A stretch of DNA of 63,620 nucleotides, filler included, from Olpidium bornovanus S191 (taxonomy: Eukaryota; Fungi; Olpidiomycota), in NCBI GenBank assembly GCA_017911155.1. It is 27 parts of 27 records of this genome, joined end to end, with 100 filler letters (N's around TTAATTAATTAA, not from the genome) between each part and the next. Parts side by side here need not be neighbours in the genome. Positions count along the whole stretch, not along the records: positions 6,452 to 10,541 come from JAEFCI010010273.1; 26 more parts are not named here. One strand, written 5' to 3'. Both the position numbers and the translations under genes were made by a program. Of the stretch, positions 5,634 through 10,641 are shown piece after piece. The notes under the pieces were generated by a model, which was not told the origin of the DNA, searched no databases, and saw only the letters and a program-made list of their open reading frames with translations. Within the stretch, counting starts at the first letter, position 1. Every line of letters starts with the position of its first letter.

Positions 5634-7494
5634 AGCTCTAGCTGCGGGAGGAAGGGTGGGGTGGGGAGGCGAAGGGTCCACGAGGGCAGCCTTTCTCCGC
5701 GGCGGTGGGTGAGCCCCGGAGAGAGCGGGCGACTCCAGATGGTTGACGTTCGAAAAGCACGCGGGGGTTGTTGAAGTGGACTGGAAGTCAGAAGACGCCT
5801 GCTGCAGCGCTTGCCAGACGAAGATGAAAAACAAAAGTGACCCTCGAGCATTTGAATGGAACAACAACGCGCATGGACTCCGCAGGCGCGCGCCGGCCGG
5901 CAAGCGCAAAAGACTACTTGGCCAACAAACACGCTGTACAAACGAAGACCCCCCCGGACACCAGTGATTCACGGAAGGTGAAACGCGGCGGATGCAACGG
6001 AGACACTGCAGGAAGCGGAATCATGCCGCCCGAATGAAGGGACGGCGGCCTCCGGGATGCAGGCGCAGCCTCCGTCATGCCGATTTCAGAATTCCGCTGG
6101 GCGGGGGGGTGGGGGGAGGGGCCCGCAGTAATTTCGGTTGAGCCCAGTTGGAATCATCTTCCACGAAGCAAATCTGGGACCTAACACCACAGGAGGCGAA
6201 TCCGGCGGAAGGAAAGACAGAGGGAGGGCCGTGTTACCTGGAGTTTAAATGACGGACTCCGCATCCTGGTGGCAGCATCCGGAGCCTTGAATCCGGGATC
6301 CCGTCAGGGGAAAACGGGGTGCCCTGAATGGGGGGGGGGGGGGGGGGGCGCNNNNNNNNNNNNNNNNNNNNNNNNNNNNNNNNNNNNNNNNNNNNTTAAT
6401 TAATTAANNNNNNNNNNNNNNNNNNNNNNNNNNNNNNNNNNNNNNNNNNNNAACATGCGCAACTTTTTCAGGCTCTTGGACACGATGAGGGCGGAGGGAT
6501 GGGTGGGTAATCTATTTTGCCGTCCTGCGTACCGCTGTTCGCCGCGCTGAAATGTAAGGTGTGACTATGGACGACGTCGAATAGGCGGTATTCATCTGTC
6601 AAGGCAACGTACAGGCCCTTCTAAAACCGCAAGGTAACCACCTTGCCGGTTACTTGATGCTGGACGAGGCGATAAAAAACTGGCCGAAAGGAACAGAACG
6701 GCCTTACGTATGAGATTGGGTGCTGCATCGAGAACGCCAAGCGCGCTGCATCGGCTGCACGGGTAACTTTTCGCACTTCCTTGGCCCTCCTTAAGATTTT
6801 CACTGTAATCATACCAATCATTCGCAATATATACCCAACTCGCTGTCCTCTGGCTGCAACGGCATTAAAAAACAAAAGCGCCGTCACGGTTTGAATCTTA
6901 CGAGAAAACGTGGGTTGAGAACCCACGGCATATTATCCCTAACAAAAAAATTCGCCTCTTTTTTCCCACTCAAAATTTGATACCGCCAACGCGCCGCAGA
7001 CCCCCAGCTAACCCCTGCTGCGGCACCAATGCGGAAGGTGAAACGAAAGTCGATTTCGTTTTGCCCCTTCCGTTAAGCCCGCGGTGCTGTTTAGCGAGAA
7101 CTCCTGATTCGGAGTTCTCGGGAGGCTTCATGCAATGCTTGCTGCTTGGAACCGCACACAGACGCGTTCCGCAAACCGCAGTTGGGGCCGTCGTTTGCCG
7201 GGGTGCGGGGTGCAGGGAAACATCCCGCCCCCCCGCGCGCGCAACGCCGGGCCCTGGTTCCCTTCCCCGCTCGCCCCCGCCAGCGGCTCCCGCCCGCCCC
7301 TCCTCCCCCGCATCCCCGCCAACGACACAGCAATCGCGCTCTGCCCGCCACGGCCCTGCCTTTGCCGTCGCTTTCCCGCGGCACCGCCACTTCTCTGGCA
7401 CACCGCGCGGCCAAGGGGGGAAAAAAAAAAAGGAAAAAAGAGCCGCGGTGTCCCGAGATCAGTACAGGACGGTTGCCGTCGCGGCCGGACACAC

Positions 7495-9333
7495 ATGGCG
7501 AAGAACAGGAAGAACAGGCCCGCAAGCAGCAACGGCAGCGCCGGCAGCGCCGGCCCCGCCACCAACCAAGCCGACGGCGGTTCGGCGTCGCCGTCCTCTC
7601 TGTTCGCTGGCCGCGGAGTGGACCAGCCTGCCGCCGCCGTCGCCCCTCCTTCCGCCTCATCGGCACCGGCTAACCCCTCTTCGTCACGGCGCTCGCCGGC
7701 GGCGAAGAAGCTGAAACCGTCTCTCCACGCAGGCGGCCAGGGCGGCTTGTTCCTGGACCCGCTGCCGGAAGCGTCGTCGCCCCCCGCTTCGCGGGATGCC
7801 GGGCAGCTCATCTCCTTTCCGTCGATGCATCCCGTCGCCGCGGGCAGTCCGGCGTCTGCGCTGCGGGTCAACACGAAGCAGGCGCAGCAGCAGCACACCA
7901 CGTTCTCGTCGCTGGCCAGTCACGGCCTCCTGAGCCCCACCGCGCTGGCTTTCTCCCAGCAGTTCGGGATCGGGCCGGGAGGTTCAAGCCAGGCGCGCCG
8001 GTCGTCGATCGTCCCCTTCGGGTTCGGGTCCGCTTCCGCGCCGGCGATCTCCGTCTCGTCGCCCGCTTCGGCGACCGCTGCCGATCTTGGCCGGCCGCGA
8101 CCGTCGGATTCCGCCGGGCCGCCGTTGCCTACGCGCAAGGCGAGCACCTGGATGCTGGTGCCGGCTGTATTCCTGGCGCTCTTCCTGGACAACTTCATCA
8201 CGGCGTTCGTCGTGCCGATATTACCGCTGTACCTGAAAGACCCCGAAAAAGTTGGGTTCCTGTTCGCCAGCAAGGCGCTTGTGCAGATCTTGTGCAACCC
8301 TTTCGTCGGCGTCCTAACCGACGCCGCCGGCCGCGTTATACCCATGCAAGTCGGCAACGCGCTGTTCGTCGTATCCAACATCATTTTCGCCGCCGCTCGT
8401 GGATATATGGGTCTGTTGTTTGCCAGGGCGTTGCAGGGGGTGGCTTCCAGTTTACTGGCCACTGCGGGTGCGTGTGTCCGTATGACGTCAATGACCGGCC
8501 GGCCGCAGGCCGTTTATCTTGAAAAGTTTTCCGATCTGACGATCCTCCCCGCGACGGCGTCCTCGAAAAGGCATGGCTCTGCTCGCGGACGTGTTCACTG
8601 ATGAGACCGAGCGCGGCGTGGCGATGGGCAAGGGTTTGAGCGGGGTCGCCCTCGGGTTGCTGTCGGGTCCGCCGTGCGGCGGTTTCCTCTACTATATCAG
8701 CGGGGGGGCGGTGACGCTCCCTTTCGCCGCGGTGTCTGCATTGTCGGTCGTCCTGGCCTTTCTGCTGTTTTGGGTCCACGAACCGGCGCGGCCGAGCGCC
8801 CAACAGCCGGGCGATCTTCCGCCTGCTTACGAAGAGCACGGCCGCAGATCCGTCGGCGACGCTTCGGAGACCGCGCCGCTGTTGTGGGCACTCTCGTCTC
8901 AGAGGGACCACCCCTCCGCAGACGGTCACCTCAGCGAAGACTTGTTCGTCAGCGACGAATGGGGCGCGAGCGACAGCACGGCGGCGGCCGGCCGCCGCGA
9001 CGCCGGCGCCCCGCCGATGCCGTACGGCACGATCGCGGGCCGACCGGCGGCGAACGACTCCGTCGAGAGGCCTCTGGCGGAGTCGCGCTCCGCTCCGCGG
9101 GAACAGTCCACGTACGTTGCCCTCTTGCGCAACGGGGCTATCGCCGCTGCGTTCCTGTCACTCTTTGTCGCAAATTCCATCGTCGCCGCGTTAGAGCCCA
9201 CCCTTCCGCTCTGGTGGGGCTCCTCGGGCATTGGCTTGACGGACAACCCTATGGTCGTCGGTGAGCGTTTTCCGTCGGGCAGGGGGTCTTCCCTGCTCGG
9301 AGAATTTTCGTTTTTCCTTTTTTTTATTTTTTT

Positions 9334-9367
<34 letters not shown>

Positions 9368-10420
9368 CCGTTCCTGACGGGGCGTCCCACACCGCGGCCA
9401 GGCTTCCTGTTGGCGTCCTCGACGATCTCGTACACGTTGGTCTCGCCTTTCTCCGGCGTCTTGGGTGCACGTGTCGGACGGGCGCGGCTGATCTGCGCCG
9501 GCCTCGTTTTCCTTGGCGCGGCGCTCCCGTTCATCGCCCTGCCTCGGTCCATTCTAGGGTTCTGCCCCCCGCTGCTCCTTTCGGGAATCGGCATCGGGCT
9601 GGTCGATGCCAGCTGCCTGGCGGTGGTGGCGGCGAAGACGGACGAATGGTCGGCCGGCGCCGACGCCGATGGGGCGCACGGCGACGACCCGGACCGCCGC
9701 GAGCAGGCGCTCGCCGTGAAAGACACGTACAACGCGGGGGAGTCCGCGCAGTCGTATTTCTACCACGCACCGAGGAGCCCGGTCAAGAGGCGAAGGTCGC
9801 TGTCCCGCCCCGGTACCGCGCCGTCGTCAGACCGTGGCGGCCGACGGTCCGAGCGTTCGTACAGCCGCCACCAAGACGAGGATCAGCATCGGCACGGCCA
9901 GCACGTTCTTGCGAGACACGTCGAGAGCAACGGACGAGACGGCGGCAAGGCCAGGCACGGTGGGGGGTACTATGCTCACGTGTTCCCCTCCGCCCCAATC
10001 GGGGATTCGCTGTACTCCCCGTGCTTCTTACCCCCGGACGGGCACCATCAGCAGCCGGGCCATCATCACCACCGGCGCGAAAACCCCCCCCCACGCGTCT
10101 CCCCGCCGCCGGCCGGCCGGCGGCCGTCCTCACGCGGCGAGAGCGTGGGGGCCAGTTCGAGCGACGGCGCGCGGGGCGGCGGCCGTAACATGTACGGCAA
10201 AGCGTTCGCGCTGGCCGATGCGGCGATAAATCTTGGGTACTTCGTCGGTCCCAGCCTGGCGTCGCAGCTCACCGCACGTTTCAACTACCCTATCGCGCTC
10301 TATGCCTTTTCCGGCATCGGCTTGGTGGCAGCACCTGTCGCGTACGCGCTGCTCTGGAACGACAGGCGGTCGGCGGCGGCAAGGAGAACGCCGGTCCCGG
10401 TGACCGCTCGGTTACCGTGA
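7495..10420 (+). CDS. SLC18/VMAT-like MFS vesicular amine:H+ antiporter, complete, 3 exons
   Basis: Exons 7495-8467, 8571-9260 and 9402-10420 splice in phase. Motifs VFLALFLDNFITAFVVPILPLYL, VGFLFASKALVQILCNPFVG, ARALQG, MALLADVFTDETERGVAMG, ANSIVAALEPTLPLW, GIGLVDAS and YGKAFALADAAINLGYFVGP align TM by TM with VMAT2. Confidence 0.85.
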
Positions 10421-10641
10421 AAGGAATGGGACGGACCGGTGCTTTCCATCTTTTTTACTATCGTTCGGAATGGTCATGATCCATCTACATAGAGTCCGCG
10501 GGTGGTAACAGACTGACCCCGCTCCCCCCTCCCCCCCACCTNNNNNNNNNNNNNNNNNNNNNNNNNNNNNNNNNNNNNNNNNNNNTTAATTAATTAANNN
10601 NNNNNNNNNNNNNNNNNNNNNNNNNNNNNNNNNNNNNNNNN

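What the first reader, a model, noticed from the sequence alone, without database searches (positions are those of the whole stretch)
7495..10420. Animal-type vesicular monoamine transporter (SLC18A/VMAT) signature in a fungal gene
Seen: the spliced protein matches VMAT2 helix by helix and keeps residues equivalent to human VMAT2 D33 (LDN), K138/Q142 (FASKALVQ), R189 (ARALQG), E312 and W318 (LEPTLPLW), Y341 (ISY), D399 (GLVDAS), D426 and Y433 (ALADAAINLGY). Established: these residues couple protons and bind amines in VMAT/VAChT, which are mainly known from animal secretory vesicles. Inference: a pre-metazoan SLC18A-like amine/H+ antiporter retained in an early-diverging fungus, or a horizontal acquisition. 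It could load biogenic amines or polyamines into vacuoles or vesicles.
Basis: partly seen in the sequence, partly recalled or inferred. Interest (0 to 1): 0.76.

Follow-up and report, generated by a model that had tools for sequence, protein, structure and literature searches.

The report
VMAT-like amine transporter, non-animal eukaryote
A three-exon gene from a GC-rich microbial eukaryote encodes a membrane transporter that keeps every key proton- and amine-handling residue of the animal vesicular monoamine transporter. It sits on an old, non-animal branch of that family, of which other members are already on record.

Summary
Exons 7495-8467, 8571-9260 and 9402-10420 splice into an 893-aa major facilitator superfamily (MFS) protein. 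Among solved structures its best matches are human VMAT2 and VMAT1 (E 6e-44 and 2e-41), then VAChT (4e-25) and NorA (3e-14).

It is not SLC18B1: no profile hit, and 2 of 12 signature residues. It is not nested among animal VMAT/VAChT either. It lacks the large luminal loop 1. It groups, weakly, with short-loop homologues from protist transcriptomes and metagenomes (Syssomonas, a diplonemid, MMETSP, EukProt). These lie between bacterial VMAT-like pumps and the animal clade.

The best hit among 1.84 billion representatives is only 39% identical, so this is an isolated lineage. Its source organism, and the "fungal" label, could not be determined.

The most likely function is H+/organic-cation (amine) antiport by the VMAT mechanism. 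Substrate and membrane are inferred, not shown. Pre-animal SLC18A-like genes have been reported before (Goulty 2023; Göhde 2021), so this is a new member of a known kind. It is notable for a complete VMAT2 signature (12 of 12) and three large cytosolic inserts. Leucine at the V232 position predicts tetrabenazine insensitivity.

The parts
6950..7494 (+). GC-rich upstream region / probable 5' UTR and promoter; not coding
   Evidence: There is no GC3 excess in the CDS frame (GC1,2,3 = 0.64, 0.65, 0.68), against 0.83 at GC3 just after ATG 7495. GC rises from about 50% to 65-72% at about 6950. An A-rich tract lies at 7417-7440.
7495..8467 (+). Exon 1: start codon, a 215-aa Ser/Ala/Pro-rich cytosolic N-terminal extension (7495-8139), then TM1 to the first half of TM4. 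Holds D232(D33), N233(N34), K260(K138), Q264(Q142) and R311(R189).
8468..8570 (+). Intron 1 (103 nt, GTGCGT...AAG, phase 1, CTGAC 35 nt before the acceptor)
   Evidence: It contains in-frame stops and shows no GC3 periodicity. The VMAT2 alignment is continuous across the junction...LLATAG|MALLADVF....
8571..9260 (+). Exon 2: rest of TM4 to TM6, a 108-aa cytosolic loop 6-7 insert (about 8791-9097), TM7 and the start of luminal loop 7-8. Holds M326(M204), R339(R217), L354(V232 position), N526(N305), E533(E312) and W539(W318).
9261..9401 (+). Intron 2 (141 nt, GTGAGC...CAG, phase 1) with a T run of about 50 nt at 9318-9367 and CTGAC 27 nt before the acceptor
   Evidence: GC is 0.43 with no periodicity. 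The T run is and the splice signals. Homology is continuous across the junction...NPMVVG|FLLASSTISY.
9402..10420 (+). Exon 3: TM8-TM10, a 182-aa Gly/Arg/Ser/His-rich insert in cytosolic loop 10-11 (9641-10183), TM11-TM12, a short C-tail and stop TGA. Holds Y565(Y341), D623(D399), Y819(Y418), D827(D426) and Y834(Y433).
   Evidence: The insert has GC3 0.82, like the conserved exons, and carries no donor or branch signals.

Best explanation
The gene encodes a 12-helix MFS transporter of the drug:H+ antiporter-1 type. It belongs to the VMAT-like (SLC18A-related) lineage and comes from a GC-rich, intron-bearing microbial eukaryote. It most likely exchanges luminal or external protons for a cytosolic organic cation, an amine, by alternating access as VMAT does.

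Inferred mechanism, by residue:
- D232 (D33) and E533 (E312) are the protonation and amine-binding carboxylates.
- K260-Q264-D827 (K138-Q142-D426) form the TM2-TM11 hinge network.
- R311 (R189) and N233 (N34) line the cavity.
- Y565-D623 (Y341-D399) link TM8 and TM10.
- W539 and F257 (W318, F135) close the luminal side.

The likeliest physiological role is sequestration of biogenic amines, polyamines or cationic toxins into an acidic vacuole or vesicle energised by the V-ATPase.

Shown here: the gene structure, family placement, fold and residue conservation. Inferred: proton coupling, cationic amine substrate, membrane location. The three long inserts (N-terminus, loop 6-7, loop 10-11) all lie on the cytosolic face and probably serve regulation or sorting.
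For: - Spliced ORF and junctions supported by homology.
- Pfam MFS_1, E 7.7e-43.
- VMAT2 and VMAT1 are the best solved-structure matches by sequence (6e-44). They are also best by fold (TM-score 0.89-0.91), using a model of pLDDT 89.9.
- It keeps 12 of 12 functional VMAT2 residues. Medians are 10 for animal VMAT-like representatives, 8 for protist relatives, 4 for bacterial relatives and 2 for SLC18B1.
- The roles of these residues are established experimentally in PMC5940252 and PMC10959523.
- Profile scores for the window protein: protist group 351 bits, animal VMAT 297, bacterial 271, VAChT 183, SLC18B1 none.
- In an NJ tree rooted on SLC18B1, VMAT-like versus SLC18B1 is 200/200 and eukaryotes together 122/200. 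The window protein is sister to protist sequences in more than 170 of 200 replicates.
- GC3 periodicity of 0.75-0.84 in every proposed coding segment, inserts included, argues for a live gene.
Against: - No functional data exist for any member of the non-animal group.
[quoted passage not shown] Homology alone does not prove monoamine transport.
- Bacterial relatives such as BbMAT are multidrug/amine efflux pumps that share D33, E312 and R189. The conserved core is therefore compatible with broad cation efflux.
- The protein lacks luminal loop 1 and its disulfide, which PMC10959523 reports (citing earlier work) to be critical for VMAT transport.
- The backbone of the tree is weakly supported, and identities to all groups are similar: 34-39% in the N-half and 25-26% in the C-half.
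- A 182-aa insert between TM10 and TM11 is unusual and not verified by RNA.
- The AF2 alignment was dominated by animal VMATs, so the fold match is partly inherited from it.
Confidence: 0.72

Rival explanations
1. Same fold and proton antiport, but the protein is a plasma-membrane multidrug/toxin efflux pump (DHA1, like bacterial BbMAT or NorA, or yeast TPO/QDR-type pumps) rather than an endomembrane amine loader.
For: Bacterial VMAT-like proteins score nearly as well as animal VMATs: profile 271 versus 297 bits, and P0085 from a Syntrophomonas MAG is 36% identical. D33, R189, E312 and Y341 are shared with them. BbMAT is described as a close bacterial homologue of VMAT that also depends on these carboxyls (PMC5940252). 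VMAT1 structures themselves bind MPP+ (entry 8tgg).
Against: K138, Q142, D399, D426 and Y433 are typical of the eukaryotic groups and are mostly replaced in bacteria by Y, L, L, N and M. The window protein has all of them, plus N34 and W318, which are otherwise commonest in animal VMATs. Location cannot be read from the sequence.
Confidence: 0.3
2. It is an SLC18B1-type vesicular polyamine transporter orthologue.
For: SLC18B1 is the SLC18 member described as the closest relative of VMAT in sponges. Polyamines are universal, plausible substrates.
Against: Authentic mammalian SLC18B1 sequences give at most 22 bits against the core, while VMATs give 184-195 bits. The SLC18B1 profile finds nothing. 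SLC18B1 separates from all VMAT-like sequences at 200/200. SLC18B1 has only 2 of the 12 signature residues, R189 and Y341.
Confidence: 0.02
3. The gene is a recent horizontal transfer from an animal, or the piece is animal contamination.
For: The N-terminal half is up to 45% identical to vertebrate VMAT1/2, as high as to its nearest protist relative. The 12 of 12 signature exceeds that of all protist relatives.
Against: It was never nested in the animal VMAT/VAChT clade in 200 bootstraps. It has a 5-7-residue loop 1-2, where animal sequences have 23-400 residues. Identity is no more than 39% to everything in 15 billion proteins. GC3 of about 0.8 and short introns with CTGAC branch sites are uniform across conserved and unique parts of the gene.
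Confidence: 0.03
4. The locus is a decaying or mis-modelled gene: the large inserts are unrecognised introns, or the protein is non-functional.
For: The 182-aa loop 10-11 insert and the 215-aa N-terminus are low-complexity, and most relatives have no counterpart. In 70% GC DNA, long open frames arise easily.
Against: The inserts show the same third-position GC excess (0.82-0.83) as the conserved helices, unlike the introns and the upstream DNA. They contain no GTRNGY donor paired with a CTRAY branch site. Every functional residue is intact. All inserts fall in cytosolic loops, where MFS proteins tolerate them.
Confidence: 0.07

Closest known systems
SLC18A1/SLC18A2 (VMAT1/VMAT2), animal vesicular monoamine transporters
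   Same: 12-TM MFS fold (TM-score 0.89-0.91). Best sequence match among solved structures (6e-44). All of D33, N34, K138, Q142, R189, Q192, N305, E312, W318, Y341, D399, D426 and Y433 are conserved. About 35% identity over the core, up to about 45% in TM1-6.
   Different: No large glycosylated luminal loop 1 and no loop1-loop4 disulfide. Three long cytosolic inserts. Falls outside the animal clade. Has L at V232, T at L37, L at F334, I at F429 and F at Y422. V232L abolishes dihydrotetrabenazine binding (PMC10959523), so tetrabenazine sensitivity is not expected. Substrate unknown.
Non-bilaterian and unicellular SLC18A-like sequences: sponge, choanoflagellate and other holozoan outgroups of VMAT/VAChT (Goulty et al. 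2023, PMC10244343); 'VMAT/VAChT in some fungi' (Göhde et al. 2021, PMC7934909)
   Same: Same grade. These are short-loop eukaryotic homologues branching outside bilaterian VMAT+VAChT. My set includes Sycon ciliatum, Syssomonas multiformis, the diplonemid Namystynia, and MMETSP/EukProt and metagenome proteins. The highest profile score is to this group (351 bits).
   Different: At most 39% identical to any of them. It is the only one with all 12 VMAT2 signature residues; the others reach at most 10. The loop 10-11 insert is nearly unique. None of this group has been functionally characterised, as far as I could find.
SLC18A3 (VAChT)
   Same: Same fold (TM-score 0.86) and same charged-residue framework.
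   Different: A weaker match: E 4e-25 and profile 183 bits. The VAChT clade is a separate group at 200/200 inside animals.
Bacterial VMAT homologues (BbMAT of Brevibacillus brevis; Syntrophomonas MAG protein P0085) and NorA
   Same: DHA1 12-TM proton/cation antiporters that share D33, R189, E312 and often Y341. 33-36% identity.
   Different: The bacterial proteins are about 400 aa without inserts. They mostly carry Y/L/L/N/M at K138/Q142/D399/D426/Y433. They separate from the eukaryotic group in the tree at a modest 122/200. NorA is much more distant (3e-14).
SLC18B1 (vesicular polyamine transporter)
   Same: MFS fold, and nominally the same SLC family.
   Different: Essentially no detectable specific similarity. 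About 19-21% identity. 2 of 12 signature residues.

Membership tests
SLC18A (VMAT1/2 + VAChT) | 12-TM MFS (DHA1) fold | tested here: met
   Pfam MFS_1, E 7.7e-43. The AF2 model has 12 long helices and pLDDT 89.9. Foldseek gives TM-score 0.89-0.91 to VMAT1/2.
SLC18A (VMAT1/2 + VAChT) | Membrane-embedded charge and polar network: D33, K138-Q142-D426, R189, E312, Y341-D399 | tested here: met
   All are present in the HMMER alignment to human VMAT2. Residue numbers D232, K260, Q264, D827, R311, E533, Y565, D623. 12 of 12 signature sites.
SLC18A (VMAT1/2 + VAChT) | Large N-glycosylated luminal loop between TM1 and TM2, disulfide-linked to loop 7-8 | tested here: not met
   The loop is 5-7 residues (LKDPEKV), against 23-400 in animal sequences. 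There is no equivalent Cys pair. The role of the loop and disulfide is described in PMC10959523.
SLC18A (VMAT1/2 + VAChT) | Phylogenetic position inside the clade formed by animal VMAT and VAChT | tested here: not met
   In NJ trees it sits in the protist grade outside the animal clade and was never nested in it in 200 bootstraps. Backbone support is weak.
SLC18A (VMAT1/2 + VAChT) | Delta-pH-driven monoamine or acetylcholine uptake; inhibition by reserpine, tetrabenazine or vesamicol | not testable with these tools
   Needs a transport assay. L354 at the V232 position predicts loss of tetrabenazine binding.
Non-animal eukaryotic VMAT-like group (unnamed; holozoan and protist outgroups of SLC18A) | Short loop 1-2, extended cytosolic loop 6-7, K138/Q142/D399/D426 retained, closest by profile and tree | tested here: met
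   Loop lengths. Site frequencies. Profile 351 bits, the highest of five groups. Sister to P0065 in 101/200 replicates and to protist-class sequences in more than 170/200.
SLC18B1 (VPAT) | Specific sequence similarity to authentic SLC18B1 | tested here: not met
   At most 22 bits to six mammalian SLC18B1 proteins and no profile hit. Separated at 200/200.
Bacterial VMAT-like DHA1 pumps (BbMAT type) | About 400-aa protein; D33/E312/R189 core with Y/L/L/N/M at the K138/Q142/D399/D426/Y433 positions | tested here: not met
   The window protein has the eukaryotic residues at all five positions. It also has introns and long inserts.
   The piece carries only this gene. There is no relative at 40% identity or above and nothing close in JGI metagenomes. 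The 30 relatives I could name are animals, protists, metagenomic or bacterial, and none is a fungus. Short GT-AG introns with CTGAC branch sites fit fungi but are not diagnostic.

The most novel reading that the evidence does not exclude
This is a true vesicular monoamine loader outside animals, possibly outside Holozoa if the source is a fungus or another protist. On that reading, the complete VMAT2 binding and coupling site (12 of 12 residues, N34 and W318 included) existed before animals and before luminal loop 1 was added. Regulated storage or secretion of biogenic amines would then be an ancient eukaryotic trait. The protein would also offer a naturally 'minimal' VMAT core for mechanistic work.
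Probability: 0.15. Interest if true: 0.65.

Novelty: new member of a known kind. Interest (0 to 1): 0.38.

Why it matters
VMAT and VAChT are usually treated as animal, even bilaterian, inventions, and the origin of vesicular amine storage is an open question in nervous-system evolution. This gene adds a very divergent non-animal member whose functional site is more VMAT2-like than that of any other non-animal relative sampled. That makes it a good candidate for testing whether the pre-animal branch already transported monoamines. Its lack of luminal loop 1 also tests how far that loop and its disulfide are needed for the mechanism. The existence of pre-animal SLC18A-like genes is already published, so the finding refines the picture and does not change it.

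Tried and rejected
1. Word-indexed homologue searches with the full protein and with the helix-only core returned only animal VMATs at 36% or less, plus a few metagenomic or bacterial proteins. They found no self-match and no close relative. The full-length query was probably swamped by low-complexity words.
2. An exact look-up of the exon 2-3 ORF product found nothing. The spliced model was not accepted by that tool.
3. A JGI metagenome scan found nothing above 26% identity, so the source organism could not be traced.
4. A coccidian origin (Toxoplasma-like low-complexity inserts) was considered and dropped. GC3 of about 0.8 and introns of 100-140 nt do not fit my recollection of coccidian genes. 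Any annotated relative would also have appeared at 50% identity or above. A literature search for a Toxoplasma VMAT found nothing.
5. SLC18B1 membership was rejected. All comparisons used the authentic named proteins it returned.
6. Hidden introns in the inserts: none found.
7. There are no tRNA, Rfam or notable repeat features in the piece apart from homopolymer runs.
8. The supplement of PMC7934909, which might say which fungi have VMAT-like genes, is not held.
9. Only distance (NJ) trees could be built, because no maximum-likelihood software was available. Deep branching order is therefore unresolved.
Full report
**1. What is in the sequence**

The piece (6452-10541) holds one gene on the + strand. 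An open frame from ATG 7495 breaks at 8467/8468 (GTGCGT). It resumes after AAG at 8571, breaks again at 9260/9261 (GTGAGC) and resumes after CAG at 9402. It ends at TGA 10418-10420.

The spliced CDS is 2682 nt, 893 aa.
- Intron 1 is 103 nt, not a multiple of three, and contains stops.
- Intron 2 is 141 nt, 43% GC, and contains a T run of about 50 nt.
- Both introns carry CTGAC 27-36 nt upstream of the acceptor.
- The HMMER alignment to human VMAT2 runs through both junctions without a gap. This independently supports the model.

Third-position GC is 0.75-0.84 in every proposed coding segment. In the two introns it is 0.40-0.50, and in the DNA upstream of ATG 7495 it is 0.47-0.68.
- This supports 7495 as the start.
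- It also indicates that three long low-complexity stretches are translated: the N-terminal 215 aa, 108 aa in loop 6-7 and 182 aa in loop 10-11.
- These stretches contain no donor or branch-site signals like those of the real introns.
- No tRNA or Rfam feature is present.

**2. Is the observation true?**

Yes.
- Pfam gives MFS_1 at E 7.7e-43.
- Against all PDB sequences, the best matches are human VMAT2 (6.1e-44) and VMAT1 (2.4e-41). VAChT (4e-25) and NorA (2.9e-14) follow.

Counting along the printed alignment reproduces human numbering (D33 in LLLDN, K138 in FASKATVQ, and so on). In the 893-aa protein these are D232, K260, Q264, R311, E533, W539, Y565, D623, D827 and Y834.

They are described as part of the polar network and gates (PMC10959523; PMC5940252).

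An AlphaFold2 model of the helix core (pLDDT 89.9, pTM 0.90) matches VMAT2 and VMAT1 structures at TM-score 0.89-0.91 and rmsd 2.3-2.5 A. VAChT matches at 0.86 and NorA at 0.76. One caveat: the alignment fed to AF2 was mostly animal VMATs.

**3. Relatives**

An exhaustive HMMER search of 1.84 billion representatives, standing for about 15 billion proteins, found 4487 hits. The best is only 39% identical (P0065, E 4e-58).
- The protein itself and any close relative are absent from the collection.
- They are also absent from JGI metagenome contigs.

The top 150 hits fall into three structural classes.
- **Class A:** a long TM1-TM2 loop of 23-400 aa. Named members are animal VMATs. A 17-member subclade is VAChT, since its member P0185 hits PDB VAChT at 5.5e-79.
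- **Class B:** a short loop 1-2 and usually a long loop 6-7. These come from marine and other eukaryotic transcriptomes and metagenomes. Named members are Syssomonas multiformis (a unicellular holozoan), Namystynia karyoxenos (a diplonemid), MMETSP and EukProt entries, and the sponge Sycon ciliatum.
- **Class C:** about 400 aa and compact. At least one is from a Syntrophomonas MAG, so this class is bacterial.

The nearest relative, P0065, lies on a 15-kb metagenome contig with fragmented, intron-split eukaryotic genes. That contig is 45.7% GC, so it comes from a different organism than the 65-72% GC window.

**4. Which residues are diagnostic**

- D33, R189, E312 and, mostly, Y341 are shared by all three classes, bacteria included.
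- K138, Q142, D399, D426 and Y/F433 are typical of the two eukaryotic classes. In bacteria they are mostly replaced by Y, L, L, N and M.
- N34 and W318 are common in animals but rare in class B (N34 in 3 of 37, W318 in 11 of 37).

The window protein has all twelve. For comparison:

| Group | Signature residues out of 12 |
|---|---|
| Window protein | 12 |
| 35 class-B proteins | none above 10; median 8 |
| Bacterial relatives | median 4 |
| VAChT | median 11 |
| Animal VMAT-like representatives | median 10 |
| SLC18B1 | 2 |

N34 and N305 were added from the literature, and both also match.

**5. Family placement**

I obtained authentic SLC18B1 proteins.
- They give at most 22 bits to the core, against 184-195 bits for VMATs.
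- An SLC18B1 profile does not detect the protein at all.
- Profiles of the other groups score 351 bits (class B), 297 (animal VMAT-like), 271 (bacterial) and 183 (VAChT).

A neighbour-joining tree on 382 columns, rooted on SLC18B1, with 200 bootstraps (an earlier version is):
- VMAT-like versus SLC18B1: 200/200.
- Eukaryotic classes together: 122/200.
- VAChT clade: 200/200, inside the animals.
- Window protein + P0065: 101/200. With P0148 added: 91/200.

The immediate sister of the window protein is a class-B sequence in more than 170 of 200 replicates. It is never nested inside the animal VMAT/VAChT clade.

Identities to all groups are similar and low: N-half means of 34-39% and C-half means of 25-26%. 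It is therefore a long, isolated branch, and the deep order is unresolved by these methods.

**6. Conclusion on identity**

It works like, and is related to, SLC18A. It fails two membership features: clade position, and the large luminal loop 1 with its disulfide.

It is best filed with the non-animal eukaryotic VMAT-like grade. Published work already reports this grade:
- Goulty et al. 2023 placed sponge, choanoflagellate and other holozoan sequences as outgroups of bilaterian VMAT/VAChT (PMC10244343).
- Göhde et al. [quoted passage not shown]

Horizontal transfer from an animal, or animal contamination, has no support.

The 'fungal' label cannot be tested. Short GT-AG introns with CTGAC branch sites and high GC3 are compatible with a GC-rich fungus, but equally with many protists. 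None of the 30 relatives whose origin I could read is fungal.

**7. Mechanism (inference)**

The residue roles come from mutagenesis and cryo-EM of VMAT2 (PMC5940252; PMC10959523).
- D33 and E312 are the essential carboxylates whose protonation drives the conformational switch. E312 and K138 coordinate the amine substrate.
- K138-Q142-D426 form an inter-domain hinge.
- R189 is essential for transport.
- Y341-D399 tie TM8 to TM10.
- F135, F334 and W318 form the luminal gate.

With all of these except F334 (leucine here) conserved, the protein most likely acts as an H+/organic-cation antiporter.

Several substitutions fall in the drug pocket: L at V232, T at L37, I at F429 and F at Y422. In VMAT2, V232L abolishes dihydrotetrabenazine binding. 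I therefore predict tetrabenazine insensitivity, so a negative tetrabenazine result would not refute the VMAT-like mechanism.

All three large inserts map to cytosolic segments in MFS topology. This is consistent with regulatory or sorting roles.

The substrate could be a monoamine, a polyamine or a xenobiotic cation. The membrane could be vacuole or vesicle, or the plasma membrane. Both remain open. The bacterial homologue BbMAT shows that the shared core also supports multidrug efflux. In C. elegans cat-1 mutants, the sponge proteins that failed to rescue were the SLC18B1 paralogues, described there as the closest sponge relatives of VMAT. This warns against assuming monoamine transport from homology.

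**8. Verdict**

This is a real, intact and unusually VMAT2-like transporter gene from an unidentified GC-rich microbial eukaryote. It is a new, very divergent member of an already noted pre-animal branch of the VMAT family, not an animal-type gene acquired by a fungus. Its interest is moderate, chiefly as a candidate for the first functional test of that branch.

Noticed in passing
window 9318-9367: A homopolymer T run of about 50 nt sits inside intron 2. Both introns carry CTGAC 27-36 nt upstream of the 3' splice site (8536 and 9374).
   Followed up: partly
window 6452-7494: GC content steps from about 50% (6452-6950) to 65-72% from about 6950 onward. The upstream 1 kb has no codon periodicity and no convincing ORF. 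A C-rich stretch (7230-7350) and an A-rich tract (7417-7440) precede the start codon.
   Followed up: partly
window 9641-10183 (residues 634-815): A 182-aa Gly/Arg/Ser/His-rich insert (including HHQQPGHHHHRR) lies in the normally 10-residue cytosolic loop between TM10 and TM11. Among 150 relatives, only P0148 (93 aa) has a comparably long loop there.
   Followed up: partly
window 8657-8659 (L354): The protein has leucine at the position of VMAT2 V232. The V232L mutation abolishes dihydrotetrabenazine binding in VMAT2, so the protein is predicted to be tetrabenazine-insensitive.
   Followed up: partly
L001 1543-3078 and flanks: The nearest relative (P0065, 39% identical) lies on a 15-kb ENA metagenome contig of 45.7% GC. 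Its neighbours are intron-split eukaryotic genes (DAHP synthase class II, GET3/ArsA, PIG-F, EI24, a response regulator). The called start truncates TM1: the frame continues upstream with ...ALFVDNYL, which keeps D33 and N34.
   Followed up: partly
window 8926-9732 minus strand and other antisense ORFs: Several long antisense or out-of-frame ORFs (up to 268 aa) overlap the gene. They have no homology and are the expected by-product of about 70% GC.
   Followed up: no
P0198 (Sycon ciliatum) and P0195/P0082/P0074 in the tree: A calcareous-sponge 'chromaffin granule amine transporter-like' protein with a short loop 1-2 branches just outside the animal VMAT/VAChT clade, together with unnamed metagenome proteins. 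This agrees with the published statement that sponges alone among non-bilaterians keep an SLC18A-like gene.
   Followed up: no
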